A stretch of 64,000 nt of DNA, taken from positions 62,001 to 126,000 of the IMG/VR virus record IMGVR_UViG_3300043446_004613; one strand, written 5' to 3'. Position numbers and translations under genes: made by a program. Below, in pieces: positions 21,570 through 50,312 of this stretch (position 1 is the stretch's first letter; each line of letters opens with the position of its first letter). A model generated the notes under the pieces. It was not told the origin of the DNA, made no database searches, and saw only the letters and a program-made list of their open reading frames with translations.

Positions 21570-21598
21570 TTTACGTTTGTTGTGCTACTGTCTACACT
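21570..21598 (+). promoter_or_regulatory. sigma70-type promoter, predicted leaderless transcript
   Basis: TTTACG-17 nt-TACACT; GTG start 6 nt after the -10 box. Confidence 0.55.
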
Positions 21599-21604
21599 CC
21601 TGAC

Positions 21605-22429
21605 GTGAATATCGAAACCCTTAAAGACCTGCTGGCCGTTCCAACGCTCAGCTACAAAGAACACGCGTTAGTGAACTGGCTGGTTCACTACATCACACAC
21701 AACATTCCCGGCTGCACCGTTACAATCGATCCCTATCGTAACGTGTACGTGCGCAAAGGTACGGCTAAACAGGCACCCTGCATCGGAGCGCACATCGACA
21801 GCGTCCAGCCGCTGCGCAAAGTCAAAATCGTACAGGAAGGTACGCGTATTATCGGTTATGCCGATAAAAATCGTCAAGTTGGTATCGGCGGTGATGACAA
21901 GGCGGGCGTTTTCGTGTGCCTTAACCTGCTTGAGCGCTTCAGTGACATCAGCGTGATCTTTTTCGCTACCGAGGAGTGCGGTTGCGTCGGCGCACGTAAT
22001 GTAGACCCTGAGTTTATTGCCGGAGTGGGATACTTGATCGAATACGACTGCCCCAGCCGTAACATGTTATCGTATTCCGTTGGCGGTACCCGCCTGTTCC
22101 AGAACCGGGGTGACTTTATTCAGACAGCTTTTCCTGTCCTTATGCGCCACGGCACCCAGCTATGGCAACGGCATCCGTACACCGATGTCATGGCCATCCG
22201 CCGGTTATTTCCGATCTCGTGCCTGAATCTGTCCTGTGGCTACTACAACTGGCACGCAGATAACGAGTTTGTCAGCCTGCCTGATGTTGACTTGGCCATC
22301 GCACAGGGCGAGGAGTTGATCGCTACACTGGGAAGTAAGGCATACCCTTGCCCGATCGACTTAGCGTTTGATACGGATGCGCCATTGACGCCGATTACAA
22401 GTCTGCACGTGCCAGACCCGCTATCGTAG
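21605..22429 (+). CDS. M28/M20-type zinc peptidase-like protein
   Basis: HIDSV, GGDDKAG, TEECG, EYD, WHADNE metal-ligand motifs; GTG start inferred. Confidence 0.8.
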   Translation: MNIETLKDLLAVPTLSYKEHALVNWLVHYITHNIPGCTVTIDPYRNVYVRKGTAKQAPCIGAHIDSVQPLRKVKIVQEGTRIIGYADKNRQVGIGGDDKAGVFVCLNLLERFSDISVIFFATEECGCVGARNVDPEFIAGVGYLIEYDCPSRNMLSYSVGGTRLFQNRGDFIQTAFPVLMRHGTQLWQRHPYTDVMAIRRLFPISCLNLSCGYYNWHADNEFVSLPDVDLAIAQGEELIATLGSKAYPCPIDLAFDTDAPLTPITSLHVPDPLS

Positions 22430-22441
22430 TTAAGGCTGCAC

Positions 22442-23290
22442 ATGTTTGAAGCTGCGTGGGTCATAAATAAATTCTGCAACATGGAGTGCTCGTACTGCAA
22501 CGCGCACAACGTGACGAAGCAACAGCAGATACCAGTCGACAGAATACTACGCTTTTTCAACAGTAAAGGGCGCAAGTGGCACATCAATATTGCGGGCGGT
22601 GAACCGTTTCTGTACCCGAAATTCAATGACCTATTGCACCGGCTTTGTGAAAACCACGAAGTCAGTATCATCACTAATCTGGATACGCCGCCCGTTCTTG
22701 ACTTCATTCAGACGCCACCTAAAAGCGTTCGGTACGTGATGGCCTCCCTGCATCTAGGCCAAAATCGGCGTCTGTCTGTGGATGAGTTTTGCGCCCGGAT
22801 AAAAGCTCTCAACCAAAAAGGTATTCACACGTTTGCGACGCAGGTCATCACACCAGAGGTATTCGATGCGTTTGACGGTGTGCTGAACGAATTCATATCC
22901 AAACACGGACTGGTGGTAGCCCCCAAGTGTCTGCGGGGTCTGCACGCTGGCAGTGTATATCCGGCAGCGTACACAACAGAACAAAGAGAAAAATTCTTGG
23001 AGTGGAGCCTGCTTGCGCAGCAAAGCCATAACGGGCAGCTGCACGATATGTCTGTTGATCGGGCATTTATCCACGGACGCGCTCCGTTTTTAGGCAAGCA
23101 CTGTCGGGCAGGTACGGACTTCATCCGCATACATGCAAGCGGCAAGATCACACGCTGCGGCGACAGTAACACTGTGATCGGAAACCTTTTGACGGGTGAG
23201 CTTCACCTAAAGGCGGAGCCTGCGCTGTGCGATATAAAAGACGCCTGTCCGTATTTTTGTTACCGGCACTCTTTACTGACAGCGCCGTAG
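22442..23290 (+). CDS. radical SAM protein with C-terminal Cys-rich (SPASM/twitch-like) domain
   Basis: CNMECSYC, GGEPF, C-terminal CRAG...RC...CD...C...C. Confidence 0.85.
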   Translation: MFEAAWVINKFCNMECSYCNAHNVTKQQQIPVDRILRFFNSKGRKWHINIAGGEPFLYPKFNDLLHRLCENHEVSIITNLDTPPVLDFIQTPPKSVRYVMASLHLGQNRRLSVDEFCARIKALNQKGIHTFATQVITPEVFDAFDGVLNEFISKHGLVVAPKCLRGLHAGSVYPAAYTTEQREKFLEWSLLAQQSHNGQLHDMSVDRAFIHGRAPFLGKHCRAGTDFIRIHASGKITRCGDSNTVIGNLLTGELHLKAEPALCDIKDACPYFCYRHSLLTAP

Positions 23291-23297
23291 TTAACAC

Positions 23298-24014
23298 GTG
23301 GATAACGATAATCCAGAAGCGTTTTTGGCGCACTTGCCGCCGACGAAAGAACTGCACGTACAAGAATTGCGACGCAACATGTTCAATTACGTGCAGGATT
23401 TCTTTTACGATAACGAGGAAGAAAGCGACGACGTTCGGATGTACACAGAAGACGGTGCTTACGTGAGGCAGGTTCCAAACAGCTACAACGGACGTGACAT
23501 CTACGTAGCTGTTCGCGACGATCATCCAAATCCCGAGCGCCGTCGGTCTGAAGTTGTGCTTACTGATCTTCAACACCGTACGATTACAACGTATAGACAC
23601 CACATCAGTTTTGCAGAAGCAGCTATGTCGGCGATAGCCCTTGCAGCGAAGCTGGAGAACGGCCAAGCTGAAATTGTAGGCCGAAACCGTTTAATCGTTC
23701 ACGAATCTATGATCACTGAAAGTAAACACAAAGCAGACTGCACCTGTGGTTTCTGTAAAAACAAAGGGAGCTTCGGCAAAAAAGAAAAGGCCGAAGCCAA
23801 GCCTGAGATGACCGCAGAAAGCGTTGTAGACACGCTTCTTGAAAACGATTACGCGCAGCGCATGAAAATCGGCGCGGACGTTGAAAGCGAACACACCAGT
23901 GATCCAAAAAAGAAGCGTAAAATTGCACGCGAGCACATGCGCGAGAATCCAAAGTACTATCCCAAGACGCCTAAGCCGAAGGGCGCTAAAGAAGCGTTGC
24001 GCTGGACAAAATAG
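23298..24014 (+). CDS. modular hypothetical protein with DUF5661-like C-terminal domain
   Basis: GADVESEHTSD...KIAREHMRENPKYY; internal CTCGFC; internal VVDTLLE. Confidence 0.7.
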   Translation: MDNDNPEAFLAHLPPTKELHVQELRRNMFNYVQDFFYDNEEESDDVRMYTEDGAYVRQVPNSYNGRDIYVAVRDDHPNPERRRSEVVLTDLQHRTITTYRHHISFAEAAMSAIALAAKLENGQAEIVGRNRLIVHESMITESKHKADCTCGFCKNKGSFGKKEKAEAKPEMTAESVVDTLLENDYAQRMKIGADVESEHTSDPKKKRKIAREHMRENPKYYPKTPKPKGAKEALRWTK

Positions 24015-24097
24015 TTAAGCACTTGGTCTGCCGTCAGCGTGTTAGTGCTGGCTGCTTCGACAGGTGCGAATACCAGCACGCGCTACTGACCGGTTGC

Positions 24098-24977: not shown

Positions 24978-24980
24978 ATT

Positions 24981-25145: not shown

Positions 25146-25552
25146 AGCGGCTCAATGGTTACCACGCCTTCCAGAGTGAAAATGTTCACGTGGATATGGT
25201 CGGCAGTAGCTAAAGTCGTATTACTGTATACAGGTTTAATTCCGTCGGCAACGGAGATTGTTATGTGTGGGTAGTCGTTTTCGCTTTCGACGCCGACAAG
25301 GGCCGCCTGCGCTTTACCGTCATCAGCGTAAGCTACGACAGGTATGTGTACGATTTCACCTTCAAGGTCACGGTATTTGGACAGAGTCGCTTCATCCGGG
25401 TCATAGGCCATCGTGACGTGATGCGCTATTACACGTTCCAGCGTCGGCGGGATGCGTCGCAAAAGCTCGGCACGGCTGGCCGGTGTCAGCACGGCACCGA
25501 CAAAGAGTCCGGTGCTTTCGAGCATCTGCTTTACAACATTCTGCGCGTTCAT
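25142..25552 (-). CDS. 2H phosphoesterase-family protein
   Basis: Two HxT motifs (AHHVTM, PHITIS). Confidence 0.72.
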   Translation of the reverse strand: MNAQNVVKQMLESTGLFVGAVLTPASRAELLRRIPPTLERVIAHHVTMAYDPDEATLSKYRDLEGEIVHIPVVAYADDGKAQAALVGVESENDYPHITISVADGIKPVYSNTTLATADHIHVNIFTLEGVVTIEPL

Positions 25553-25556
25553 GTCG

Positions 25557-25570
25557 TAACTACGTAGTTA
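25557..25570. promoter_or_regulatory. palindromic bidirectional motif TAACTACGTAGTTA between divergent genes
   Basis: Perfect 14-bp palindrome made of two back-to-back TAGTTA motifs; recurs at 41661. Confidence 0.7.
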
Positions 25571-26701
25571 ATGGATATGAGCGAAGAAAACTTAGACAGC
25601 TTTGATGTTGTTGTACCGGAAATTCCATTACCGGTAGCAGCAGAAACCGCAGACATTAAAGATGAATTCGAGGGCGGTTTCAAATTCGCTTTTATTGGCA
25701 GCGGCCAAGGCGGCGGGCGACTGGCACATACTTTCTGGAAGCTCGGCTACCGTCGCGTTTGCGCCGTCAACACCGCGTCGCAGGACTTGGCAACCTTGCC
25801 GTTGCCGGAGGCCAACAAGCTGTGTCTCGGCGATGCAGGCGGCGCAGGCAAGAATCCAGCGGTGGCCAAAGCCACGTTCAAAGAGCGCAAAGAGGACGTT
25901 CTCGATTTCATGCGTCGCTCATTCGGCCCCGGACTCGATCGCGTATTTGTCTGCGTTGGTGCGGGCGGAGGAACTGGCGCGGGTACGGCAGTGCAGCTTG
26001 TAGACACAGCCGTCGAACTTCAGAAATCGCTCAAGTGCAAGAGCGACAAGGTCGGCGTCATCGTAGCGCTGCCCAAGCTGGCCGAAGGCAAGAAGGTAGC
26101 CGCTAATGCGTACAACACGCTGAACGATCTTCTGTTCCTTGTTGAAAAGGAGGTCGTATCACCGTTGATTGTGGTTGATAACGAGAAGATTGGAACACTC
26201 TATCCGAATCTCGCTGTTGATCCATTTTGGGATACATCGAATACGAGCGTGTGCTCCCTGTTCCATCTGTTCAATACGATCTGCGTCAAAAACAGCAGCT
26301 ACACCAGTTTCGATCGCGCTGACTTGCTGACGGTACTCGACAGCGGCTTAATCACTTTTGGAGCCAATCCGGTTACTTCGTACAGCAGTGAAACGGACAT
26401 CAGCTATGCTGTTCGTAACAATCTGCGTAAGAACATTCTTACCGGCGGCATTGACCTCGCTACCGGGGACATTGCAGCCGCTGTGGTTATCGGCGGTGCC
26501 GAGATCATGAACTCAATGCCGCAGGCATATATCGAGCACGCGTTTGACCAGCTGAACCGCATGCTCAAAGCAGGCAGCACTGTTCATCGCGGCATCTACA
26601 AGGGCAACAAGAATAACCTAGTCGTGTATACGATGGTAGGCGGTTTGGCGAAGCCGAAAGAGAAACTGGCTGATCTCAAGCGTGTTGGCGACCTGATTTA
26701 G
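25571..26701 (+). CDS. tubulin/FtsZ-family GTPase (phage PhuZ/TubZ-like candidate)
   Basis: GSGQGGG, AVNT, GAGGGTGAG signature loop, VDNE, SFDRAD T7-like loop; no FtsZ C-terminal tail. Confidence 0.9.
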   Translation: MDMSEENLDSFDVVVPEIPLPVAAETADIKDEFEGGFKFAFIGSGQGGGRLAHTFWKLGYRRVCAVNTASQDLATLPLPEANKLCLGDAGGAGKNPAVAKATFKERKEDVLDFMRRSFGPGLDRVFVCVGAGGGTGAGTAVQLVDTAVELQKSLKCKSDKVGVIVALPKLAEGKKVAANAYNTLNDLLFLVEKEVVSPLIVVDNEKIGTLYPNLAVDPFWDTSNTSVCSLFHLFNTICVKNSSYTSFDRADLLTVLDSGLITFGANPVTSYSSETDISYAVRNNLRKNILTGGIDLATGDIAAAVVIGGAEIMNSMPQAYIEHAFDQLNRMLKAGSTVHRGIYKGNKNNLVVYTMVGGLAKPKEKLADLKRVGDLI

Positions 26702-26712
26702 TTCTTGAGGGA

Positions 26713-27471
26713 ATGATCAGAGTCATCACTGCTGCTGACGACGTGTTTAAGCACGCCGTCATGCTTACGGTTAATGCGTCTGCCCGCGCAGGCTATACCA
26801 CTGAGGTTTATGATCTCGGTGGTTTAGGTTTTGGAAAGCCGTATCCGCGACCGGAGCAGTACAAAAACCATCGCCGATCTCATCTGTTCGGCCCATGCAA
26901 GCTGATTGATCAAAACGTTCGAGGTGTCGCGCCTTGGAAACCTGCATTGATCCGGGATGTACTGCTTACCTGTAAACCGGAAGATTACGTAGTTTGGCTT
27001 GATGCCGACGCTTGGATCATAAGGCCACTGAACGCTATCCAGACCGACGACTACGACATCGGCGTTACTGTCCGAAACGCGAACGAAACAGATCACGGGC
27101 ACGGCTTAATAAATGCCGGTGTCTTGTTTTTAAGACCAACACAAGCAGCCTTAAATTTCATTGACCGCTGGATACAGGAAATACCGCTCTCGACGGTACA
27201 GTCCGATCAGTTCACGCTAAATGATCTTCTGGAACGGGAAAACGTATTCAGATCGCGTGATGCTGTGTCTGTCGGGTATAACACGCGTTTTAAGTTTTTT
27301 CGTGCCGAACAGTTCAATTTCTACTACGCTCCAAAACCCCTGCTGCCTACGACCGCTATAGTACATTTCAAGCGTGATACACGTAAAAAGCACGCTGATT
27401 TTGAGCAGTGGATCGCTACAACTGCACCAGCATATCTCACTGCTGGCCTATCTGTTGATCGCGTGGCGTGA
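26713..27471 (+). CDS. nucleotide-diphospho-sugar glycosyltransferase (GT-A fold)
   Basis: WKPALI, VWLDAD, INAGVLF, SDQ..LN, IVHFK. Confidence 0.75.
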   Translation: MIRVITAADDVFKHAVMLTVNASARAGYTTEVYDLGGLGFGKPYPRPEQYKNHRRSHLFGPCKLIDQNVRGVAPWKPALIRDVLLTCKPEDYVVWLDADAWIIRPLNAIQTDDYDIGVTVRNANETDHGHGLINAGVLFLRPTQAALNFIDRWIQEIPLSTVQSDQFTLNDLLERENVFRSRDAVSVGYNTRFKFFRAEQFNFYYAPKPLLPTTAIVHFKRDTRKKHADFEQWIATTAPAYLTAGLSVDRVA

Positions 27472-27667: not shown

Positions 27668-27701
27668 TGCTTTAACTACGGCTCGGCGTTGTATTTAGTG
27701 C

Positions 27702-28157: not shown

Positions 28158-30108
28158 TGCGTCCCATCATCTGCGCAAACTGCGTTTCGGTAAGCTTAGG
28201 CACACCGTACTTTAGCGCGGCAGCCAGTTTATTCACACCGGGGTCAGTGCCAACGACAAGGTAGTCAGTTTTGCTGGTCACGCTGCTCTTCCAAACACCG
28301 CCTGCATTGCGGATAATGTCCGGTAGGTCATCGCGACCGCCGCACAAAAGACCTCCGGTAACACAGAACGATTTACCTTCCAGCGGCCCGCTGGCGCGTT
28401 TTTCACCGCTTAGCTTGATGAGTTGGTCAAGGCTGTCGATCTCTTCAACGTTGTTCAGGACGTACTCCGTCAAGTTTTGCATCACGACTGGCCCTACAAT
28501 CTCAACCAGTGCTTTGGTGTCATCATCAGTCGCAAACATCTCAGGCAGGCTCGCCCAACGATCGGCTATTTCCATGCTTAGGGCTTGACCTAGGCCGTCA
28601 ATGCCGAGTGCGTGGAGTTTGCGCCAAAACGGTTTACCAGCTACTGCGGCCCGCCCCGCCAGAAACCGTTTTTTGGCCGCTGCCTTTAGGAAGGTAGGGT
28701 CAATCGTAAACACGTCCGATATTGAACGTACCCCGTTTTCGACCAAGGTCTGGACAAGCACGTCGCCGCAACCATCAATGTCCAGCGCCTGCTTGCTACA
28801 GGCATGCTGGATACGTCCGACAATCTGATCTTTGCACTCTGGGTTTAAGCAAAACGTGTCCACAAACCCTTCCGGTCGTTGCAGTACGGACTGGCAGCAC
28901 GGACACGTGGATGGAAGTTTGTAGACACCCTTAGCGTTTTTATTGGTAAGCCCGACAATTTTCGGGATGATTTCAGCCGACTTTTCAACCAACACATCAT
29001 CACCGACATTGATGCCTAAACGGTCAATCTCGTCTTGGTTGCAGATCGAAGCCCGAGCTACCGTAGTTCCGCTCAAACCAACTGGGTGAAGGTTAGCCAC
29101 TGGAGTCAGCTTGCCTGTGCGTCCGACTTGAACCGTAATGCTTTCAAGTCGTGTCGTTTTACGTTCCGGCGGAAACTTGTAGGCACAGGCCCATTTGGGA
29201 TACTTTGTGCCGACACCCAGCTTCAGCTGTTCGCGCAAGTCATTGATCTTGAAAACCAGTCCGTCGGTAGGCAGATCAAGGAATTGACGGGCCGCGTCAG
29301 CCTCGGCAATACGCTTCGCAAGCTGTTCAGCAGTTTCAACCTTAAAGCAGTCTGCCACCGTATTGCACGATTGCGTTACCGGAAGCCAGTAGACACTTTG
29401 GAAGCCTAAAAACTCTAGGTAGTCTGTCAGGCCGCTTTGGCTGGGTGCGACGGCGTCTCCACGCGTCATACCGTAAGCCACAAAGCAAAGGTTGCGTTCG
29501 GCAACCTGTCGTGGATCGCGCAGTTTAAGTGTGCCTGCGGCAGCGTTACGTGGATTAGCCAGCAGCGGTTTACCCTCCTTTTCCAGTTTCGTGTTTAACT
29601 GGTTAAAGGTGCTGTAGCGCATGTAGACCTCACCTTTGACTTTGCAGTCAACAGGCGCTGAGAGCTTGAGTGGTATAGTCGGTATTGTACGCGCATTTGC
29701 GGTTACATCGTCGCCTTCCATGCCGTCACCGCGAGTGATCGCTTGCGTCAGCACGCCCTTCACGTAGATCAGCTTTAAGGACAACCCGTCAATCTTAGGC
29801 TCCATCGTTACCTCGGTCGGCCCGAGATATTTGAGCACTTCCTCGGCAGTGAACGTATTCTCAAGCGACAGCATCTTTTCATCGGTATGCGGAACCTTGT
29901 TAAAAGAGGTACACTTGGCACCGACACGCTGCGTAGGGCTGGCAGGATCAGCATACTGAGGGAATTCACGTTCCAGATCGGCAAGCTCATTGTACAGCTT
30001 ATCGAACTCGGCATCAGTGATTGGGCTGCAATTCAAGACGTAGTACTGGTAAGAGTAACGGGTGACGTCAGCCCGGAGCTTGGAAATACGATCAGATGTT
30101 TCGGACAT
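28114..30108 (-). CDS. ligA: NAD-dependent DNA ligase
   Basis: EPKIDGLS active site, RNAAAGTL, DGLVFK, QVGRTG, Zn finger, C-terminal BRCT. Confidence 0.97.
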   Translation of the reverse strand: MSETSDRISKLRADVTRYSYQYYVLNCSPITDAEFDKLYNELADLEREFPQYADPASPTQRVGAKCTSFNKVPHTDEKMLSLENTFTAEEVLKYLGPTEVTMEPKIDGLSLKLIYVKGVLTQAITRGDGMEGDDVTANARTIPTIPLKLSAPVDCKVKGEVYMRYSTFNQLNTKLEKEGKPLLANPRNAAAGTLKLRDPRQVAERNLCFVAYGMTRGDAVAPSQSGLTDYLEFLGFQSVYWLPVTQSCNTVADCFKVETAEQLAKRIAEADAARQFLDLPTDGLVFKINDLREQLKLGVGTKYPKWACAYKFPPERKTTRLESITVQVGRTGKLTPVANLHPVGLSGTTVARASICNQDEIDRLGINVGDDVLVEKSAEIIPKIVGLTNKNAKGVYKLPSTCPCCQSVLQRPEGFVDTFCLNPECKDQIVGRIQHACSKQALDIDGCGDVLVQTLVENGVRSISDVFTIDPTFLKAAAKKRFLAGRAAVAGKPFWRKLHALGIDGLGQALSMEIADRWASLPEMFATDDDTKALVEIVGPVVMQNLTEYVLNNVEEIDSLDQLIKLSGEKRASGPLEGKSFCVTGGLLCGGRDDLPDIIRNAGGVWKSSVTSKTDYLVVGTDPGVNKLAAALKYGVPKLTETQFAQMMGRTISTESKPAEDREY

Positions 30109-30136
30109 AATCTGTTCTTTATGTTAGGTGATTCAG

Positions 30137-30165
30137 AGTGTAGACAGTTACGCATTACGAATCAA
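30137..30165 (-). promoter_or_regulatory. sigma70-type promoter for ligA
   Basis: TTGATT-17 nt-TACACT. Confidence 0.5.
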
Positions 30166-35000: not shown

Positions 35001-35380
35001 CCGTCAAAAATAATCGTAATCAGTGGCTTTTTGCTGCCGCCGAAAGGCATGAAAGGGGTACGGCACTCGTGGTTGAAAAGGTCGCACTGCTTACAAAGCG
35101 GTGATTCGGCGCTGGGTACAGGTGCCTTTGGCAGCATCGGCGGATTTTGATCGTACGGCGTAATCCACTCGATCTTCTCTTTCTTCTTTCCGGTGGGAGG
35201 TGTTATCGATTTCTCTTCGCCGTAGTAGTAGATGAGCATGTCCTTGTCCATCTTGGGCAGGATCTTCAACTGAGACTGTGTTACCAGCGTCCCATCCGAT
35301 AAACGGAATAAGCGCTTTTTACTCGGTTTGCGAGGCGCAAGCGTCTCTTCTGCTTTTTGCTGTTCTGTTTCGTCTGACAT
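32003..35380 (-). CDS. polA: family A DNA polymerase with N-terminal UDG family 4-like domain and 3'-5' exonuclease
   Basis: Motifs A DLSQIELR, B RSIGKTVNF..GYG, C VHDS; ExoI YDTETTG, ExoII GHNLTFD; N-terminal CKQC...RC...C. Confidence 0.95.
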   Translation of the reverse strand: MSDETEQQKAEETLAPRKPSKKRLFRLSDGTLVTQSQLKILPKMDKDMLIYYYGEEKSITPPTGKKKEKIEWITPYDQNPPMLPKAPVPSAESPLCKQCDLFNHECRTPFMPFGGSKKPLITIIFDGVTHPDDMAGALGIAGDGSPAVLRQIIRKHQATTGVTLDDVRWVTMTRCSNWLKKMVDLKPRANWCRYHAIDDLMRYPPALIMPVGTVALGMLSHKSNAEEWSGRLLTFRGWPDDWLTNPKYALSYKLPNNVDAIGHPLFGPIPDWRIPMVPIQSPRIINARQNRSVRARWEKQIVAALKMAKQGVPAPKYTRKWYHWTEDPAEVSAVLGELLEQIEALKANGKKLAICYDTETTGVRPWAKDAAIVSIMLRWTDPFTNKPRSIGFPWDFGPTQDFPEWRESPLRPYLHVLKLDVWKVLTQSTLIGHNLTFDMLYTYATFWKTKLVGWDDPQYNRKRDSWLVKLANACKYDTWHMAFAIQQRRGSLGLEVLAYEWVPDLAGYEEDMTLLIDLHRESMHPAEGKGGHYLNCPVDKTETHLIPYVMGDVEVCYQAREKIAEKLATSRLYEIPLADPKRPGKFRWYAPHNREWVYEKIMSPAASVLMKMMARGLYIDKATLHMMEDTMPKRIKELRTSMANVDPRIASWIKEKAATEKGFELDLENKSQLKDLIFNVLKLPVKRFTKQGRKLLGENIDEATASLTATIASMRPELNHDEAALNAAVQEQLREVAAVDKFTLNNLCSEHEQLRPLMNYRKEFKLYSTYVRPLQNYFSEGLDKKQRTADAHLCFDSCIHASFLLTGTRGGRLSCKDPNLQQLPRDGAVKSMFVSRFGKRGCMYQGDLSQIELRLMAAACGDPTMVKAYFDDIDLHSLTTSRIFDVPYEHFSKDYMKSLQEKGNSKEAKELDEKRSIGKTVNFLTGYGGGAFGLQNVLAMKGIFRSPEECQHIIELFFDSYPSLKTLLMEYKRFIMDNHVACSVFGRVRVFEEVLGEDKEAQAKALRAGCNHLIQSTASDMMLTALCVIEDLMRQMNLESILVSTVHDSLVIDAVREELPIVHEIVTDVLNNFPDVFKHVFGNNFDTSWMLVPFSGDCEVGLNYLNMKKIPKKDIDWDKLLIIDK

Positions 35381-35410
35381 CGAATCAAAAGAACGGTGTT
35401 CTTAAAAAAT

Positions 35411-36481
35411 ATGGAACGTGAATCACAAAGTATACCGCTACCATGCTTCGGCATGGAGCATAATAGCAGCGATCCGCAGTGTTTAAGCTGTAAGCATGAA
35501 GCCGATTGCCGCATATTCATGGGTGCTCGCGCAGATAAAGTGACGCTGGATCAGGTAAAGTTCGACTTGATCTCAGACAAGTACCCAAAAGAAATATTTA
35601 ATGTTGACGACCCTGACAAGGTGCGACTGCAAACACTATACTGTAATTGTTACGCTACGGTATTTGACGGAGTAGTCCCCGATAAAAACGACAATGCTGA
35701 GCGCTTTAGTGCAAAGATATTAGCCAACGCCAACGCTGCTGATTGTTCACTTCGCATGTTCATGCTGTCAAACATGATAGCTCACGAGACACACGAAAAA
35801 CAGGTTATCAAGCATACGGAGAAACTGCGAGCGTCACGCTTTACGGCACGTTCGCTCACAAGCGCGTACGCCATAAAACGGGCGCAGATGTATCAACAGA
35901 TGTGCCGTGACCGCTTTGGCGTATTCAGTGTTAAAAGCTTGGCGGCATTGTCGGATGATAAGGAAACCATGACCGACACTGAACAGCTGATGCTGCAAAA
36001 TGAAGTCATGGCCGGTACGTGGATGGTGCGCCACAAGATATTTAACAGCGGCCCGAGCGAAAGACTGATGTTTGACACCCTTGAATTCCAACTGAGCCAT
36101 GAATGGTTGGCACTGGAATCATCTTACACGCGCTACGTGCTCACGCCGATGCGCCTCGGCGAGCTTAAAAGCACCAAGGTACAGGAGTATCGGCGCAAAG
36201 AAGTACTCGACCTTATCGGTTTTTTGAAGCGTAACCCGAGCAAAGGCCGCTGGTATTGGACGACGCGTCAGGCTATCATGGCAAAAGCTGTGACGCAGGT
36301 GCTCGCAAAATTTAATCTGCAACCGTGCGATTTCATGTATAGTCGCGAACCTGTCACAGACGTGATGAGTTTTTGGCGCACGCTGGGCCTGACAGTCCGG
36401 CACTACCACTGCCTGTTGTACCTGAACGGCGAAAACAATTTATTTACGCCGCGTCACCTTCGCTGGGAACACCGTTCTTAA
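35411..36481 (+). CDS. hypothetical protein with N-terminal Cys cluster, replication-associated
   Basis: PCFG...DPQCLSCKHEADC; directly upstream of helicase. Confidence 0.7.
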   Translation: MERESQSIPLPCFGMEHNSSDPQCLSCKHEADCRIFMGARADKVTLDQVKFDLISDKYPKEIFNVDDPDKVRLQTLYCNCYATVFDGVVPDKNDNAERFSAKILANANAADCSLRMFMLSNMIAHETHEKQVIKHTEKLRASRFTARSLTSAYAIKRAQMYQQMCRDRFGVFSVKSLAALSDDKETMTDTEQLMLQNEVMAGTWMVRHKIFNSGPSERLMFDTLEFQLSHEWLALESSYTRYVLTPMRLGELKSTKVQEYRRKEVLDLIGFLKRNPSKGRWYWTTRQAIMAKAVTQVLAKFNLQPCDFMYSREPVTDVMSFWRTLGLTVRHYHCLLYLNGENNLFTPRHLRWEHRS

Positions 36482-36488
36482 CACCGCT

Positions 36489-37928
36489 ATGTCACGCTGG
36501 GAAACCTACAACTTCACGAACGACTTTCAGGACATGATCCTCGCGTGCCTTATCCGGCACCCGGAAGAATTTTATGCGTTCGGCGAAATCATCAAACCGG
36601 AATTCTTCACCGGATCAATAGCCACCGAAGCGGTATTCAATCTGATGCAGTATCGGACTGAGTACGGCAAGGTGCCTAACTTTACGGTACTGGCCAACTA
36701 CGCCTTTCACCGCTCGGCCACCGTTAACATCGATCACGCCAAGGAACTTTTCGACTACATCGAGAAACTGGCCAGCATTGAAACATCGGAGCGCAAGTAC
36801 ATCGTCAACTCGACGGTAAAATTTGCGAAGGAGCGGGCTATCTATGACGCGATCCGCAAGATTCACGCAGCCCAGACAGAAGGTAAACCGTTGGATGTCG
36901 TCAAAGTCATGTCCGATGCGCAGGCCGTCGGCGAGAACATGAACGATTACGGCCTGTCGCTGGCCCACGACACCGACAAGATCATCGATACGGTCACCCA
37001 GAAGAGCTACGGCGTCATGACGGGCTACGCGGAATTCGACAAGCTCTGGAAAACCGGCTGGGCACCCGGCTGGCTGATCGTACCGCTGGCTCCGCCTAAG
37101 CGCTACAAGACCACGTTTTCGATCAATCTGGCGCTTAATATCGTCACCAATCAGGACGCGGATGTGCTGTATTACGCCTGCGAAATCTCGCAGGAACTGG
37201 CAGGCATGCGTGCGCTTTGTAATGTCACGGGATGGAGTACCGATGCTTTCTACGAAAGCCCGGAAAAGGGCAAGCTTACGGCCAAGAAAGCTGTTGATGG
37301 AAAACTCTGGGGTAACATCGTCTTCAAAAGCTATCCGTCCAAAAGTGCATCGATCAGTCAGATCAAAGCCCATGCCAAGCACCTGATTGAAACACACTCG
37401 TTGAACGTCAGAGCGATCATCATCGACTACGCAGAAACGGTTAAGGCAGACAAGGTCGATAAAGACATGCCTGACTGGCGTCAGCAAGCTGACATCTACA
37501 CGCAGGCGCGTGCGATGGGGTCTGAACTTGGATGCTGCGTCATCATGCCGGATCGCTGCAATAAAGACACGGTGGGCCGTGATGTGCCGAGCATGAAGTC
37601 GTTCCAAGGTGCGTTTGAGAAAGCCGGTATTGTCGACATCGCTATCGGTCTGTGCGCCAGCGACAGCGAACTGAAGCAAAACCGGATGCGCTATTTTGTG
37701 TTCCTCAACCGTCACGGAGAAGCCTTGAAGCACTACGAGGGCAGCATCGATCCTGAACGTATGCAGATGTCCGTCGGGAGCGAGATCGAGTACAATCCAG
37801 ACGAAGAAGAAAACCAAAGCCGTGGCGGTGGTAGCGGCCATTCCCGCAGCGGTTTACCTAAAAAGCGCACAAGCGCAGCGTCTCGGCAAGCGGCACACGA
37901 AGCGGCGATGACTCAAGCAGACGGATAA
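36489..37928 (+). CDS. DnaB/gp41-like replicative helicase
   Basis: RecA-like SF4 layout: APPKRYKT (variant Walker A), YYACE, IIIDY Walker B, VFLNRHG. Confidence 0.85.
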   Translation: MSRWETYNFTNDFQDMILACLIRHPEEFYAFGEIIKPEFFTGSIATEAVFNLMQYRTEYGKVPNFTVLANYAFHRSATVNIDHAKELFDYIEKLASIETSERKYIVNSTVKFAKERAIYDAIRKIHAAQTEGKPLDVVKVMSDAQAVGENMNDYGLSLAHDTDKIIDTVTQKSYGVMTGYAEFDKLWKTGWAPGWLIVPLAPPKRYKTTFSINLALNIVTNQDADVLYYACEISQELAGMRALCNVTGWSTDAFYESPEKGKLTAKKAVDGKLWGNIVFKSYPSKSASISQIKAHAKHLIETHSLNVRAIIIDYAETVKADKVDKDMPDWRQQADIYTQARAMGSELGCCVIMPDRCNKDTVGRDVPSMKSFQGAFEKAGIVDIAIGLCASDSELKQNRMRYFVFLNRHGEALKHYEGSIDPERMQMSVGSEIEYNPDEEENQSRGGGSGHSRSGLPKKRTSAASRQAAHEAAMTQADG

Positions 37929-37934
37929 TTTTAA

Positions 37935-37963
37935 TTGACTGTATACATTTGTGTGCGTACAGT
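37935..37963 (+). promoter_or_regulatory. sigma70-type promoter for the tRNA/ncRNA/tmRNA cluster
   Basis: TTGACT-17 nt-TACAGT ending 5 nt before the tRNA. Confidence 0.8.
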
Positions 37964-37968
37964 CTGTT

Positions 37969-38045
37969 CGCGGGGTGGAGCAGCCCGGTAGCTCGTCTGG
38001 CTCATAACCAGAAGGTCGTTGGTTCAAATCCAACCTCCGCAACCA
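37969..38045 (+). tRNA. tRNA-fMet (CAT), initiator type
   Basis: Full cloverleaf, C1:A72 mismatch, anticodon loop CTCATAA, encoded CCA. Confidence 0.95.
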
Positions 38046-38234: not shown

Positions 38235-38652
38235 GGGCGCGTACTGGTTTCGACTTTGATCGTAGCGGTGACGCCGACATGCCGAGGATGATGGTTGGCC
38301 TCGTAAAACAAACCGTCAAAAGTTAAATGCTGAAGAAGCTGAACTGAACAGCCTCCTCGCGGAAGCCGAAAGCATTTTCAACAATGCTGACGAAGTTCTC
38401 GCGAACGCTGAAGCTGTGGCGGCCTAACGGCCACCACCCGTTTACCGATCGATGCCTGCTGAATCGAGTAAACGCCATTAGCAGGACAGTGTGGATGCCG
38501 AGCAACGTCGGCGTTGGCCCGTGCCAGCCTATGGCGCAACCGGCAGGGTTTTCAGTTGTCGCTCTGATCCTGCCGCACAAAAGCGAAGAAGCATGTGAAT
38601 GGTGCAGTGTTACGGACATAGGACAGGGGTTCAACTCCCCTCGCGTCCACCA
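38235..38652 (+). ncRNA. ssrA: transfer-messenger RNA (tmRNA)
   Basis: 5' GGGCGCGTACTGGTTTCGAC; 3' GGGGTTCAACTCCCCTCGCGTCCACCA; G3-U wobble; pk1 CGAGG/CCTCGTAAA; tag ORF 38329-38427 ending AVAA*. Confidence 0.95.
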
Positions 38653-39201: not shown

Positions 39202-39962
39202 AACAGGCTGTTGTATTTGTTTGCCACCGTTGGTGCGCGTCTACGCGCTCAGAATTTGAGCGCATGCAGCGCGAGATCGGAAACCGCGCCGACTGCTACC
39301 TGCTTTTTCAGTCAGATACTCCAGTCGACTATCCCGTTTTTCGCGTAACGTCTGCCGATCTTATTGACCTTGGTTACCGTAATCTGACACTGCCGCTACA
39401 GGCAGGTTTTAAGCAGCTGCCTGTTTTCGTCTTCCACCGCAAGCAATCTTATGACTACTACTGGTTCGTCGAGTATGACGTACGTTTTACCGGTAATTGG
39501 GAATTATTGTTGACGAGCTTTGAGACTAATCCGGTCGACTTTCTAGCAGCGCACGTGCGCACAGACGTGCAAGAACCTGAATGGTGCTGGTGGCCTAGCC
39601 TGCAACACCCTACACAAGTACACCGGAATAAACTCAGGTGTCTTGCGGTCGTGTTTAGAATCAGCCGTGCTGCGATGGGCTGCCTTGATGATGCCTACGT
39701 CTCTGGTTGGATCGGTCACCCCGAGGTGCTGTGGCCTACAATCCTGTATCATGCTGGGTATACGATCGAAGATTTTGGCGGTGAAGGTGCATTTACACCT
39801 GCCGGTCGCGTGGCACGCTGGTACTGCGATAGCTCTCCGAACAGTAAAGGTCAGCTATACGACGGCACTTTACGCTTCCGAAACCCTATGCGTGTTGCCG
39901 GTACTTTGACGGATAAGCTCTACCATCCAGTTAAAACGGCTGATCATCAGGAACAGGTTTAG
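39198..39962 (+). CDS. DUF3405-like glycosyltransferase-related protein
   Basis: YDYYWFVEYDVRFTGNW, GHPEVLWPT. Confidence 0.6.
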   Translation: MKQAVVFVCHRWCASTRSEFERMQREIGNRADCYLLFQSDTPVDYPVFRVTSADLIDLGYRNLTLPLQAGFKQLPVFVFHRKQSYDYYWFVEYDVRFTGNWELLLTSFETNPVDFLAAHVRTDVQEPEWCWWPSLQHPTQVHRNKLRCLAVVFRISRAAMGCLDDAYVSGWIGHPEVLWPTILYHAGYTIEDFGGEGAFTPAGRVARWYCDSSPNSKGQLYDGTLRFRNPMRVAGTLTDKLYHPVKTADHQEQV

Positions 39963-40473
39963 CGTCGTATTCGCTTTCGTCCGCATCTCCACGCTCCGTG
40001 CGCGGTGTGTTGTCGGCACCTTGAGCACTATTCTCTGCGTGGGTTAAAACCCGGATATTCCAGATGTGGTAGCCTTCATTCCAGTCTTTACGGTCGATTG
40101 TAAGGTCATCTGGTTGATTGCCGCGCTTGGCTAAATAACCCGTATCTGTGCAGAATTTAATGAATTGTTCAAGGGTTAGTGTAAAAGGCAGATTCCGTTT
40201 ACGAGCGCTGTGCCTGAGCATATTCAGCACGTACGTCGCAGGATGTCGCTCTTTAAGACGGCGAGAACGACACTTCCAGCAATGCTCCAGCATATAGCCG
40301 TTAGAGTTAACGGCTCGCGCATTACGGCACCACTTAGACGCGCACTTGTCCTCTTTGCTTCGCGCTTTGGGTGCCTGCTTCCACTTTTTACGGTTACGTC
40401 GGCGCACGCAGGTTAAGAACGGATTAAGTATTTTTTGATTACGGTTGAAAAAGCGTTTACAAATAAGTTGCAC
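39931..40473 (-). CDS. HNH-like phage protein
   Basis: LTLEQF...LTIDRKD..EGY...NIRVLT..ENS pattern; N-terminal Cys pairs. Confidence 0.55.
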   Translation of the reverse strand: MQLICKRFFNRNQKILNPFLTCVRRRNRKKWKQAPKARSKEDKCASKWCRNARAVNSNGYMLEHCWKCRSRRLKERHPATYVLNMLRHSARKRNLPFTLTLEQFIKFCTDTGYLAKRGNQPDDLTIDRKDWNEGYHIWNIRVLTHAENSAQGADNTPRTERGDADESEYDAKPVPDDQPF

Positions 40474-40496
40474 GGCTGTTGCATACAGTGTATCGT
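40468..40496 (+). promoter_or_regulatory. sigma70-type promoter, predicted leaderless transcript
   Basis: TTGCAC-17 nt-TATCGT; ATG 7 nt after the -10 box. Confidence 0.5.
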
Positions 40497-40503: not shown

Positions 40504-40692
40504 ATGGACGCTGCTGTAAACAACCAGCCGTGCAACTGCGAACTATGCCAGCCAAACTGGCATTTAGGTCGCGACGGTGAGTTTGAGCGTGCCCCGGAGA
40601 CGGTCGAAAAGAATTCGACCGCGTTTACCCCGGAGCACTTGCTTGCTCATTTTCGTCGGATCGAAGCAGAGTTTGAGTTTGTCATTGGCTGA
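40504..40692 (+). CDS. small hypothetical protein
   Basis: MDAAVNNQPCNCELC... Confidence 0.5.
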   Translation: MDAAVNNQPCNCELCQPNWHLGRDGEFERAPETVEKNSTAFTPEHLLAHFRRIEAEFEFVIG

Positions 40693-43323: not shown

Positions 43324-43328
43324 AGCGT

Positions 43329-43628: not shown

Positions 43629-43669
43629 AATGTCAGCGTAAAAATTACAAAAACCTGTTCTTAGTACAC

Positions 43670-44764: not shown

Positions 44765-44775
44765 GTAGTTAAGGC

Positions 44776-46321: not shown

Positions 46322-46336
46322 GCTAGAAAGAACAAT

Positions 46337-46915: not shown

Positions 46916-46918
46916 TAC

Positions 46919-48867: not shown

Positions 48868-48910
48868 TAATAAGGCGCATGCGTAGAAGTAAAATAATTA
48901 AATAATAGTG

Positions 48911-48938
48911 TTGACGCTTGGCTTATCGTGTATACACT
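48911..48938 (+). promoter_or_regulatory. sigma70-type early promoter, predicted leaderless transcript
   Basis: TTGACG-16 nt-TACACT with AT-rich UP region; ATG 6 nt after the -10 box. Confidence 0.65.
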
Positions 48939-48944
48939 GGAGCC

Positions 48945-50312
48945 ATGAAATATACGATATTCGAGCACAACTTCAGTGTCCTCACCAAGAAGCTGACGAA
49001 CCTCAATCAGAAGCTCACACGTATTGGCGCAAGCCCAGTGGCTTTTTCCGTTACAGGCCAGCACGATGTTCCGGCAAACGACAACCCGACCAAGCTGCTG
49101 CGCACGTTCGATATTGAAGTCAGCTGCGCCAATCCTAGCCACAACGGTTGGAAGTTTATCGCGACAATCGTTCATACGGACGAAGGCAACATCGTTCGCG
49201 CTGTTCCGGGCTTTGAAGTATCTGCTGAACACCGCGACCGCCCAACGTGGTGTGATCACTGCAAAACTAACCGTCAGCGCCACGACACGTATATTGTCCG
49301 GCATGATGACGGTCGCACCATGCAGGTCGGTTCATCCTGCCTCGGCGAATTCATCGGCTCAGCCAATCCAAACACCCTGTGCAAAGCTGCCGAACACATG
49401 CTCAACGCGTTCGACGTATGCGACGCTGCACAGAGCCGCAACTGGCTCGGCGGTGAAGGCGCGGGTGTTTACCGGATCGACCTCGACACATTCCTCGCTA
49501 ATGTCGCTGCTACCGTGCTGGCGCAAGGACAGTATGTTACGCGCAAGAGCGCCTATGAACAACATACCACAGCAACCAGCGACATCGCCCGCAACAGCCG
49601 CTACGAGGTTACACCTGAAGCGATTAAGCTTGCGACCGATGCCCGGAACTGGGTTTTGAACACGTATAGCCCTGCAATTACCGATGTTGATGGCCTCAGC
49701 GACGGTGCGATCATCGACATGATCACCGATAGTTTCAAGTCCAGTAATCGCCAGCTGTCCGACTTTGAGCACAATCTGCTCGCAGCTGCTCGCGCTGAAG
49801 CGATTGAACCCCGCCTTTGCGGTATTGCGGCATACATCGTAGAAGCCTATCGTCGTGCGCAGCCTAAGACCAAGCCGACACAGCTGGACGCTGTGGGTCT
49901 GGAACGTATTTTCCAGATGTTTGATAAGGCAAAGTCCAACAAGCTGGCACACCCCGGTATTCGCCTTGTGGACGACGCCGGACAACATTTGAAGCTATCA
50001 CTTGCGGCAGATTCATCGAAGAACGCGGGATACGTTTACGTAAAGGGCACCGAGTACTTTGGCAAAATCTCTCCGAAAGGTGAGTTCTTCCCGGTCAAAG
50101 CGTGCCCTAGCACTGTCCACGGCCAGCTGGCCGCGTTCGCTGCTGATCCTGAAACGATTGCAGCCAAGTACGGTAAGATGACCGGATGCTGCTGCTTTTG
50201 CAGCCGTAAGCTGGATGATGCGCGTTCAACTGAAGTCGGTTACGGCCCGGTCTGCGCTAAAAAATTCGGACTGAACTGGGGTAAGCAGCTTGAAGAAGTT
50301 TTAGCCGCGTAA
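48945..50312 (+). CDS. phage protein with C-terminal DUF6011-like Zn domain
   Basis: CDHC...R, VGSSCL, CCFCSRKL.D.RS..VGYGPVCAK. Confidence 0.75.
   Translation: MKYTIFEHNFSVLTKKLTNLNQKLTRIGASPVAFSVTGQHDVPANDNPTKLLRTFDIEVSCANPSHNGWKFIATIVHTDEGNIVRAVPGFEVSAEHRDRPTWCDHCKTNRQRHDTYIVRHDDGRTMQVGSSCLGEFIGSANPNTLCKAAEHMLNAFDVCDAAQSRNWLGGEGAGVYRIDLDTFLANVAATVLAQGQYVTRKSAYEQHTTATSDIARNSRYEVTPEAIKLATDARNWVLNTYSPAITDVDGLSDGAIIDMITDSFKSSNRQLSDFEHNLLAAARAEAIEPRLCGIAAYIVEAYRRAQPKTKPTQLDAVGLERIFQMFDKAKSNKLAHPGIRLVDDAGQHLKLSLAADSSKNAGYVYVKGTEYFGKISPKGEFFPVKACPSTVHGQLAAFAADPETIAAKYGKMTGCCCFCSRKLDDARSTEVGYGPVCAKKFGLNWGKQLEEVLAA

What the first reader, a model, noticed from the sequence alone, without database searches (positions are those of the whole stretch)
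21570..48947. Host-type sigma70 promoters whose predicted +1 coincides with the start codon
Seen: TTTACG-17-TACACT then GTG after 6 nt (21605); TTGCAC-17-TATCGT then ATG after 7 nt (40504); TTGACG-16-TACACT then ATG after 6 nt (48945). Knowledge: +1 is usually 6-7 nt after the -10 box, and leaderless initiation depends on fMet-tRNA and 70S ribosomes. Inference: early genes are leaderless too, which with the two phage motifs and a phage-encoded initiator tRNA suggests a genome-wide leaderless translation strategy.
Basis: partly seen in the sequence, partly recalled or inferred. Interest (0 to 1): 0.65.

Follow-up and report, generated by a model that had tools for sequence, protein, structure and literature searches.

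The report
Promoters fused to start codons
In this 211-kb freshwater jumbo phage, host-type promoters and two phage-specific promoter-like motifs sit so close to start codons that most transcripts should begin at the start codon itself, with no ribosome-binding site, a gene-expression style so far mapped mainly in Thermus phages.

Summary
Sites 1 and 3 belong to a family of about 21 promoters (class A). Its consensus is an AT-rich UP element, TG, TTGACk, 16-18 nt, (tgta)TACAGT. Under a definition that ignores ORFs, 10 of 14 such sites have ATG/GTG opening an ORF 6-9 nt after the -10 box (background 3.5%, p about 3e-12). Site 2 alone is at chance level. However, its 62-aa gene has homologs in 15 distinct metagenome loci, and 14 of them keep TTGnnn-16/17-TAnnnT ending 5-9 nt before the same start codon.

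Two phage heptamers behave the same way. GTAGTTA is followed by an ORF start within 3-10 nt in 38 of 47 copies and precedes virion genes. GTTCTTA precedes replication genes. No gene class shows Shine-Dalgarno enrichment. Twelve divergent gene pairs have only 15-34 nt between their start codons. A related contig (PolA 70% identical) keeps motif class and spacing.

The only canonical tRNA is an initiator type, and it begins 5 nt after a class A -10 box. No RNA data exist, so transcription starts are inferred, not mapped. About a quarter of the protein-gene class A promoters have leaders. The closest precedent is the Thermus phages phiYS40 and Lalka27a.

The parts
21545..21598 (+). Site 1 class A promoter: AT-rich UP (ttattaaatttttatg), -35 TTTACG 21570-21575, 17-nt spacer, -10 TACACT 21593-21598
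   Evidence: Read. PWM rank 6 genome-wide. The ortholog in G001 has TTGACA-16-TACGCT-6-ATG.
21605..22429 (+). Site 1 gene, 274 aa, peptidase-like (phrog_4191), GTG start 6 nt after the -10
   Evidence: residues 3-229 align to profile positions 5-231. M1 aligns to M1 of the G001 ortholog (64% identity), whose start is ATG.
40468..40496 (+). Site 2 promoter-like element TTGCAC-17-TATCGT. Not class A (no UP/TG element, -35 matches 3 of 6).
   Evidence: Read. Chance-level alone. The same geometry is conserved in 14 of 15 homologous loci (alignment A2).
40504..40692 (+). Site 2 gene, 62 aa, Cys-rich (CxCxxC), no known family; ATG 7 nt after the -10
   Evidence: 20 homologs at 41-71% identity in metagenome contigs, most aligned from residue 1. 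No Pfam or PHROG hit.
48886..48938 (+). Site 3 class A promoter: UP (taaaataattaaataatagtg), -35 TTGACG 48911-48916, 16-nt spacer, -10 TACACT 48933-48938
   Evidence: Read. PWM rank 4. Also called by the consensus scan.
48945..50312 (+). Site 3 gene, 455 aa (phrog_2319 N-terminal part, DUF6011 C-terminal part), ATG 6 nt after the -10
   Evidence: residues 1-311 align to profile positions 4-302. Pfam DUF6011 hit.
2383..2422 (-). Further class A promoter TTGACA-17-TACGAT, then 8 nt, then ATG of a 357-aa gene (1312-2385)
37935..38045 (+). Class A promoter (TTGACT 37935-37940, TACAGT 37958-37963) followed after 5 nt by tRNA-fMet (37969-38045, anticodon CAU, C1xA72, A11:U24, G30:C40 and G31:C39, U29:A41, encoded CCA)
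   Evidence: ARAGORN, Rfam, sequence read, PWM.
3896..4043 (-). Class A promoter (TTGACG 4043-4038, TACAGT 4020-4015) followed after 8 nt by a tRNA-like gene (4006-3896) with a 56-nt insert in the anticodon region
   Evidence: (Rfam tRNA 35.1 bits).
30108..30165 (-). Exception: class A-like promoter TTGATT-17-TACACT with the ligase ATG 28 nt after the -10 (leader of about 22 nt)
17527..17540 (+). Motif B example: GTAGTTA 17527-17533, aagc, ATG 17538 of the baseplate wedge gene (779 aa)
   Evidence: Identical arrangement in G001. phrog_219 hit.
25550..25579 (.). Back-to-back motif B pair TAACTACGTAGTTA in a 24-nt divergent spacer between start codons at 25552 (-) and 25577 (+)
35378..35413 (.). 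Back-to-back motif C pair in a 30-nt divergent spacer: AAAGAAC (reverse complement of GTTCTTT, 35388-35394) for PolA (start 35380, - strand) and GTTCTTA 35398-35404 for the 356-aa gene (ATG 35411, + strand)
36474..36491 (+). Motif C example: GTTCTTA, 8 nt, ATG 36489 of the DnaB-like helicase
   Evidence: The G001 ortholog has GTTCTTA, 9 nt, ATG.

Best explanation
The window lies in a 211-kb jumbo myovirus-like phage from a freshwater metagenome. Its transcription units are built without 5' leaders.

About 21 host-type promoters (class A) share one design: an AT-rich UP element, TG, TTGACk, 16-18 nt, (tgta)TACAGT. They place the canonical +1, the 7th nt after the -10 hexamer, on or within 0-3 nt of the A or G of the start codon. 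For two RNA genes they place it near the mature tRNA 5' end.

Two phage-specific heptamers act as -10-only promoters for later classes. GTTCTTA precedes replication and recombination genes. GTAGTTA precedes virion genes. Each is followed at a fixed minimum distance (5 and 4 nt) by the start codon.

The resulting mRNAs start with AUG or GUG. They would be decoded by 70S ribosomes with fMet-tRNA and without Shine-Dalgarno pairing. Downstream genes in operons would be reached by tight stop/start coupling. The initiator tRNA, transcribed from a class A promoter, would support this mode.

Shown here: the motifs, their spacing statistics, the lack of SD, the conservation in relatives and the tRNA identity. 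Inferred: the actual transcription starts, the timing classes, which polymerase or factor reads the two heptamers, and any benefit from the extra initiator tRNA.
For: Class A promoters
- ORF-independent definition: 10 of 14 sites have an ORF start 6-9 nt after the -10 (p = 2.7e-12).
- PWM list: 14 of 19 protein-gene promoters have d = 6-9, with the mode and lower bound at 6.
- tRNA 5' ends lie 5 and 8 nt after the -10 in this genome and 6 nt in the relative. This places +1 independently of ORF calling.

Heptamer motifs
- An unbiased ranking of all 7-mers puts GTAGTTA first (38 of 47 copies followed by an ORF start, background 6.9%, p = 5e-36) and GTTCTTA third (17 of 32 copies).
- The same test on G001 gives GTAGTTA 9 of 9.
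- Distance distributions have sharp lower bounds with the mode at the bound: 26 of 59 at 4 nt for B, 13 of 47 at 5 nt for C.

Other lines
- 36 ortholog pairs keep motif class and near-identical spacing while the flanks diverge.
- SD duplex energies are no better than at internal codons in any class, and 0-2% of motif-linked starts reach -6 kcal/mol against 11% of controls.
- 12 of 31 divergent pairs have 15-34 nt between start codons.
- 42 of 109 operon-internal genes overlap by ATGA.
- Function split: C precedes PolA, DnaB, a helicase and SbcCD; B precedes baseplate, portal, tail fibre and sheath genes.
- Site 2 geometry is conserved in 14 of 15 homologous loci.
- N-termini of the site 1 and 3 proteins match profile and ortholog N-termini.
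Against: - No transcription start is mapped. Only two DNA runs from one freshwater sample hold the phage, and no RNA run does.
- Five class A promoters have the first long ORF 16-76 nt downstream, so the rule is not absolute.
- Pyrimidine at -1 is also common at starts without a motif (71%), so it does not discriminate.
- For heptamer sites at larger distances, the Y/R signature at the predicted fixed +1 is only weakly kept.
- No sigma, RNAP, IF3 or S21 gene was found that would explain recognition of B and C or a translation switch. Only three small N-terminal HTH proteins were found.
- Gene calls are my own codon-usage caller. The key statistics do not depend on it.
- Several starts are GTG, which E. 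coli translates poorly on leaderless mRNA (my knowledge). The host is unknown.
Confidence: 0.78

Rival explanations
1. Only the sigma70-type class A elements are promoters. The heptamers GTAGTTA and GTTCTTA are not promoters but RNA-level signals next to start codons: either non-SD ribosome recruitment sites, or cleavage sites for a phage or host endoribonuclease that trims polycistronic RNA to near-leaderless mRNAs.
For: The heptamers lie 4-9 nt from start codons, a range like SD spacing. 36 of them lie between same-strand genes, where read-through RNA would exist. No phage sigma or RNAP was detected. The host evidently does not rely on SD.
Against: 37 motif-linked starts are in divergent pairs with no same-strand upstream gene, some with only 24-34 nt between the two start codons. 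The distance distribution is a spike at a hard lower bound, not a bell. The two heptamers split by gene function like temporal promoter classes. The class A analogy gives the same geometry.
Confidence: 0.12
2. The promoters are real, but the true start codons lie further downstream. The mRNAs would then have ordinary short coding-sequence 'leaders', and the adjacency to ATG/GTG would be a by-product of how starts were chosen.
For: Starts were assigned computationally. Many ORFs have several candidate starts.
Against: The motif-centred statistics use any ATG/GTG opening an ORF of at least 50 aa, not my start choices. Protein N-termini align from residue 1 with orthologs at 64% identity, with 15 site-2 homologs and with PHROG profile N-termini. 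No SD-like signal is found anywhere.
Confidence: 0.04
3. The arrangement is not a phage strategy. The phage simply copies a host whose own genes are largely leaderless and SD-independent, for example an alphaproteobacterium, an actinobacterium or a member of Deinococcus-Thermus.
For: The phage tRNA-fMet anticodon arm (U29:A41) is identical to that of many Alphaproteobacteria (Sphingomonas, Brevundimonas, Paracoccaceae, Rhizobiales), among other groups. In Caulobacter, 75% of genes lack SD and leaderless mRNAs are translated as well as leadered ones (PMC4117421). This is compatible with the main explanation and concerns only its cause.
Against: Even in Caulobacter only 9.6% of CDSs are leaderless, against at least 38% of genes here. 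Homologs of the site-1 gene in AT-rich phage contigs carry Bacteroidetes-type TAnnTTTG plus 4 nt plus ATG, although Bacteroidetes hosts have only 3.7-5.5% leaderless mRNAs. The host is unidentified.
Confidence: 0.3

Closest known systems
Thermus phages phiYS40 and Lalka27a (leaderless transcription programmes)
   Same: Host-type -35/-10 promoters serve early genes. Later genes use phage-specific -10-like motifs without a -35. Most transcripts begin with the A or G of the initiation codon (bioRxiv 10.64898/2026.04.20.719267; review PMC3594737). The phages are large myoviruses.
   Different: Those are thermophile phages with mapped 5' ends, and their host phylum is itself rich in leaderless genes. 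For phiYS40 a shift in IF2/IF3 levels is reported. Here the source is a mesophilic freshwater sample, the lineage is unrelated (PolA best 24% identity to any isolate), and the heptamers differ (GTAGTTA and GTTCTTA against TAGGGT). A phage initiator tRNA and tmRNA are present, no IF3 gene is found, and nothing is mapped experimentally.
Lambda cI mRNA from PRM (the classic leaderless phage mRNA)
   Same: A sigma70 promoter whose +1 is the A of the AUG, translated by 70S ribosomes with fMet-tRNA (PMC10491246, listed). Homologs of the site-2 small gene add an inverted repeat around the -35, which suggests an operator-controlled regulator gene.
   Different: In lambda it is a single gene. Here the arrangement covers at least 100 genes in three promoter classes.
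T4 late promoters (gp55/gp33, TATAAATA at -10) - from my own knowledge
   Same: A short -10-only motif with no -35 suffices and marks virion genes. This is the likeliest working analogy for GTAGTTA and GTTCTTA.
   Different: T4 late mRNAs have leaders with SD sequences. No gp55-like or sigma r2 protein was detected here. The motif sits about 2 nt closer to the presumed +1.
Jumbo phages with mapped transcription starts (phiKZ, AR9)
   Same: Jumbo genome size and short phage-specific promoter motifs.
   Different: phiKZ has no leaderless transcript, and most of its 5' UTRs are 31-40 nt (PMC8244752). AR9 UTRs are 26-491 nt (PMC5312081). Both encode their own multisubunit RNAPs, and none was detected here.

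Membership tests
Sigma70-type (-35/-10) bacterial promoter | -35 hexamer close to TTGACA | tested here: met
   Site 3 has TTGACG (5/6) and site 1 has TTTACG (4/6). The class consensus is TTGACk. Site 2 has TTGCAC, only 3/6.
Sigma70-type (-35/-10) bacterial promoter | Spacer of 17 +/- 1 nt and a -10 hexamer TAnnnT | tested here: met
   Spacers are 17, 17 and 16 nt. The -10 hexamers are TACACT, TATCGT and TACACT. All class members have 16-18 nt.
Sigma70-type (-35/-10) bacterial promoter | AT-rich UP element upstream of the -35 (optional enhancer) | tested here: met
   Sites 1 and 3 have 84-88% AT in the 25 nt upstream. Site 2 lacks the class pattern.
Sigma70-type (-35/-10) bacterial promoter | Transcription by the host holoenzyme starting about 7 nt after the -10 | not testable with these tools
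   No RNA run holds the phage and the host is unknown. Indirect support: tRNA 5' ends lie 5, 6 and 8 nt after the -10.
Leaderless mRNA | Primary 5' end at, or fewer than about 5-10 nt before, the start codon | not testable with these tools
   Predicted from geometry only: d = 6-9 for class A, 4-9 for B, 5-8 for C.
Leaderless mRNA | No Shine-Dalgarno sequence upstream of the start | tested here: met
   0-2% of motif-linked starts reach -6 kcal/mol with the anti-SD, against 11% of internal control codons.
Leaderless mRNA | AUG (or GUG) as the 5'-terminal codon and an authentic protein N-terminus | tested here: met
   84 ATG and 16 GTG among 100 motif-linked starts. N-termini align with orthologs and profiles.
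Bacterial initiator tRNA (tRNA-fMet) | CAU anticodon, C1xA72 mismatch, A11:U24 | tested here: met
   Sequence 37969-38045 read. ARAGORN call.
Bacterial initiator tRNA (tRNA-fMet) | Three consecutive G:C pairs (29:41, 30:40, 31:39) in the anticodon stem | tested here: inconclusive
   Two of the three are present, with U29:A41 in place of the first. The same arm occurs in the genomes of many Alphaproteobacteria and Patescibacteria, so it is a natural variant.
phiYS40/Lalka27a-type leaderless phage programme | Host-type early promoters plus phage-specific -10-only later promoters, all abutting start codons | tested here: met
   Classes A, B and C. Function split.
phiYS40/Lalka27a-type leaderless phage programme | Sequence relatedness to those phages | tested here: not met
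   No Thermus phage appears among the listed best PolA or sheath matches. The best isolate matches are 22-26% identical. The similarity is one of design, not of descent.

The most novel reading that the evidence does not exclude
The phage has given up Shine-Dalgarno initiation altogether and runs a private expression regime. Three promoter classes are fused to start codons. tRNA genes are transcribed from their mature 5' ends and so would not need RNase P. The phage's own initiator tRNA and tmRNA are made from an early promoter. This regime would let the phage disable or outcompete leader-dependent host translation while its own leaderless mRNAs keep being read by 70S ribosomes. The design would recur in distant phages with other host promoter types (TAnnTTTG plus 4 nt plus ATG in Bacteroidetes-type contigs).
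Probability: 0.15. Interest if true: 0.85.

Novelty: new variant of a known kind. Interest (0 to 1): 0.62.

Why it matters
If transcription starts are confirmed, this would be a mesophilic, uncultured jumbo phage lineage in which most transcription units are leaderless across all temporal classes.

- It gives simple rules for annotating starts and promoters in such genomes. Standard gene callers that expect an RBS will misplace starts.
- It supplies two compact 7-bp promoter motifs and ultra-short (15-34 nt) bidirectional promoter units.
- It offers a natural system for asking how a phage exploits or enforces SD-independent, 70S-type initiation.
- It suggests a concrete role for phage-borne initiator tRNA, which is usually explained only by codon usage.
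- The same geometry appears with Bacteroidetes-type promoters in distant contigs, so promoter-to-start-codon fusion may be commoner in phages than in their hosts.

Tried and rejected
Searches that found nothing useful
- A near-identity DNA search against isolated phages found nothing. PolA and sheath protein searches gave only 22-26% identity matches, so there is no named relative.
- The sequencing-run search returned only two DNA runs from one freshwater sample and no RNA. Read laying was therefore not used and transcription starts could not be mapped.
- Pfam six-frame searches of the genome found nothing for T7-type RNAP, RNAP beta, RNAP beta', sigma70 r2, peptide deformylase, IF3 or S21. 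For T7-type RNAP the controls were also silent, so that result is uninformative. A DxDGD-type regex gave no convincing RNAP.
- Sigma70 r4 hits turned out to be N-terminal HTH domains in three small proteins, not demonstrable sigma factors.
- Ten class A proteins have no Pfam family. Six large proteins have no PHROG.
- No site-3 ortholog was found in G001, and only a C-terminal relative in viral contigs.
- The AT-rich jumbo contigs that share the site-1 gene lack this PolA. They are not close relatives and I use them only as an analogy.

Arguments dropped
- Pyrimidine at -1 is also frequent at starts without a motif, so I dropped it as a transcription-start signature.
- Host assignment from the tRNA-fMet arm is too broad to be more than a hint.
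- Stop-codon recoding was considered because G001 has a CUA tRNA. It is not supported in this genome, where TAG ends 58 of 264 genes and coding density is 94% under table 11.
Full report
**Context.** The window is bases 62001-126000 of a 211,113-bp IMG/VR virus record, estimated 93% complete. It encodes a family A DNA polymerase, an NAD-dependent ligase, a DnaB-like helicase, a second helicase, baseplate, sheath and portal proteins. It is therefore a jumbo contractile-tailed phage. It has no close DNA match among isolated phages, and its best protein matches to isolates are 22-26% identical. The only sequencing runs that hold it are two DNA runs from one freshwater sample. No RNA run holds it, so everything below about transcription starts is inferred from sequence.

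**The observation.** Each start codon opens an ORF. PHROG profiles align from the N-terminus of the site 1 protein (274 aa, peptidase-like) and the site 3 protein (455 aa, DUF6011 at the C-terminus).

**Class A promoters.** I called 264 genes with a codon-usage caller (94% coding) and listed the upstream regions. This showed that sites 1 and 3 are members of a stereotyped family: TAAAAT-rich UP element, TG, TTGACk, 16-18 nt, (tgta)TACAGT.
- I used a definition that ignores ORFs: TTGAC, 16-18 nt, TAnnnT, and at least 60% AT in the 25 nt upstream. It finds 14 sites. Ten have an ATG/GTG opening an ORF of at least 50 aa 6-9 nt after the -10, against a background of 3.5% (p = 2.7e-12).
- Eight TTGAC sites without the AT-rich element show no such start.
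- A PWM built from the family finds about 21 sites, and sites 3 and 1 rank 4th and 6th. Among the 19 that precede protein genes, 14 have d = 6-9, with the mode and the lower bound at 6. That distance puts the canonical +1 on the first base of the codon.
- Five are exceptions with leaders. One is the ligase gene, whose ATG lies 28 nt after the -10.

**tRNA genes give an independent ruler.** Two class A promoters precede RNA genes.
- The tRNA-Met at 37969-38045 begins 5 nt after TACAGT.
- A tRNA-like gene at 4006-3896 begins 8 nt after TACAGT.
- In the related contig G001, a tRNA with anticodon CUA begins 6 nt after TTGATT-17-TACAAC.

tRNA 5' ends are defined by structure, not by ORF calling. 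Their position supports a +1 about 7 nt after the -10 and a general no-leader design.

**Site 2.** This element is not in class A: it has no UP/TG element and its -35 matches 3 of 6 bases. The consensus scanner does not call it. Among 1351 comparable TAnnnT sites, ORF starts at 6-7 nt are no more frequent than at other distances. In isolation it is chance-level.

However, the 62-aa Cys-rich ORF has 20 homologs in metagenome contigs. In 14 of 15 distinct loci, a TTGnnn-16/17-TAnnnT element ends 5-9 nt (mode 6-7) before the orthologous ATG/GTG (alignment A2). In most of these homologs an inverted repeat, GTAGACG..CGTCTAC, brackets the -35; the window's own copy shows no clear repeat. Those contigs otherwise show SD-like words before genes. 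The promoter-to-start unit therefore travels with this gene. Site 2 is real, but for a different reason than sites 1 and 3.

**The two phage motifs.** I ranked all 7-mers by how often an ORF start follows within 3-10 nt.
- GTAGTTA comes first: 38 of 47 copies, against a background of 6.9% (p = 5e-36).
- GTTCTTA comes third: 17 of 32 copies (p = 3e-12).
- GTATTTA is a variant: 10 of 15 copies.
- Composition-matched permutations average 6-8%.

Distances have hard lower bounds with the mode at the bound: 4 nt for GTAnTTA (26 of 59) and 5 nt for GTTCTwn (13 of 47). This is what a fixed transcription start would impose, and it is unlike the bell-shaped SD spacing.

Genes behind GTTCTTA include PolA, DnaB, a helicase and SbcC/SbcD. 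Genes behind GTAGTTA include baseplate, portal, tail fibre and, at 15 nt, the sheath gene. I therefore read them as middle and late promoter classes.

In total, 100 of 264 genes carry a class A, B or C motif 2-10 nt before the start. Among genes that head a divergent unit, 42 of 64 do. Several of the remainder show one-mismatch variants.

**Anatomy that leaves no room for leaders.** Twelve of 31 divergent gene pairs have only 15-34 nt between their two start codons, with the motifs back to back. Examples are TAACTACGTAGTTA at 25557-25570 and AAAGAACggtGTTCTTA at 35388-35404. Of 109 operon-internal genes without a motif, 42 overlap the upstream stop by ATGA, and 75 lie within -8 to +5 nt of it. 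This pattern suggests coupled re-initiation.

**No Shine-Dalgarno signal.** Duplex energies between the anti-SD and the 18 nt before the start are no better than at internal in-frame ATG/GTG codons, in every gene class. Motif-linked starts are depleted: 0-2% reach -6 kcal/mol, against 11% of controls.

**Relatives.** G001 (IMGVR_UViG_3300037424_002697, 56.8 kb, PolA 70% identical) reproduces the pattern.
- GTAGTTA is followed by an ORF start in 9 of 9 copies. The three best class A hits have d = 7, 7 and 6.
- In 36 ortholog pairs the motif class and spacing are kept while the flanks diverge.
- This includes site 1, which is TTGACA-16-TACGCT-6-ATG in G001. The two proteins align M1 to M1 at 64% identity.

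More distant homologs of the site 1 gene (35-42% identity) lie in AT-rich jumbo contigs that lack this PolA. There the gene, and many neighbouring genes, are preceded by the Bacteroidetes-type box TAnnTTTG plus exactly 4 nt plus ATG, in 32 distinct contexts. That box occupies -12 to -5 (PMC9723704), so this is the same +1-on-the-start-codon geometry. Yet leaderless mRNAs are only 3.7-5.5% in Bacteroidetes hosts.

**Translation factors and polymerases.** The tRNA-Met has the initiator hallmarks: C1xA72, A11:U24, anticodon CAU, and two of the three G:C pairs, with U29:A41 in place of the first. It is the only canonical tRNA in the genome. An identical anticodon arm occurs in many Alphaproteobacteria, Patescibacteria and Bdellovibrionales. 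This is a weak host hint. It fits Caulobacter, where 75% of genes lack SD and leaderless mRNAs are translated efficiently (PMC4117421).

I found no phage RNAP, sigma r2, IF3, deformylase or S21. I found three small N-terminal HTH proteins. What reads the heptamers is therefore unknown. My best guess is host RNAP redirected by a phage factor, by analogy with T4 late promoters (my knowledge).

**Comparison with what is known.** Leaderless phage programmes are documented for the Thermus phages phiYS40 and Lalka27a. In these, most transcripts start with the A or G of the initiation codon, and late promoters have a phage-specific -10. Other jumbo phages with mapped starts, phiKZ and AR9, have no leaderless transcripts. 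The present phage is unrelated by sequence to the Thermus phages but shares their design. It adds its own initiator tRNA, leader-free tRNA genes and very short bidirectional units. I rate it a new variant of a known kind.

**Verdict.** My confidence that most class A, B and C units give leaderless or near-leaderless mRNAs (5 nt or less) is about 0.78. The decisive experiment is 5'-end mapping.

Noticed in passing
window 38235-38652 (+): A full-length tmRNA gene (Rfam RF00023, 127.5 bits). ARAGORN predicts an unusually long acidic tag ending in AVAA. It lies about 190 nt downstream of the tRNA-fMet with no promoter of its own, so the two are probably co-transcribed early.
   Followed up: partly
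window 3896-4006 (-): A tRNA-like gene (Rfam tRNA, 35.1 bits) with normal acceptor, D and T arms and an encoded CCA, but a 56-nt insert in place of the anticodon arm. ARAGORN missed it. It is driven by a class A promoter.
   Followed up: partly
G001 26701-26775 (L094:6701-6775, +): The related phage contig carries a tRNA with anticodon CUA (amber-suppressor type) right after a class A-like promoter. In the window's own genome TAG is an ordinary stop (58 of 264 genes), so no recoding is evident.
   Followed up: partly
whole genome; in the window e.g. 4017, 8118, 25225, 37940, 43191, 48929, 62293: The 8-bp palindrome TGTATACA occurs 40 times against about 3 expected. About a dozen copies overlap the class A -10 region, and the rest are mostly inside genes. 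It may be an operator for early-promoter shut-off, or a site for another DNA-binding or modification function.
   Followed up: partly
L014-L092 (AT-rich viral contigs): The Bacteroidetes-type promoter box TAnnTTTG is followed by exactly 4 nt and then ATG in 32 distinct contexts. This suggests leaderless early genes in unrelated jumbo phages whose hosts rarely use leaderless mRNAs.
   Followed up: partly
L096-L114; weakly in window 40444-40496: Homologs of the 62-aa Cys-rich gene have a conserved inverted repeat, GTAGACG..CGTCTAC, bracketing the -35 of their promoter. It looks like an operator, or a terminator for the upstream gene. The repeat is degenerate in the window copy.
   Followed up: no
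window 39931-40407 (-): The gene divergent from site 2 is a 158-aa basic, Cys-rich protein that looked HNH-endonuclease-like to me by eye (no family search was run on it). It is preceded by GTTCTTA plus 6 nt plus GTG. The region 38.9-42.2 kb has no counterpart in the G001 fragment.
   Followed up: no
G000 127484-129178 (outside the window): A 564-aa gene is one of the few preceded by a good SD-like GGGAG 5 nt before the ATG, with a 114-nt gap upstream. I did not scan its function. Not every gene in this phage avoids SD.
   Followed up: no
G000 137733-137836 (-), outside the window: A class A promoter is followed by a leader of about 70 nt with a hairpin (CCTTGGCTGG..CCAGTCAAGG) before a 374-aa gene. 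It is an exception to the leaderless rule and a possible regulatory leader.
   Followed up: no
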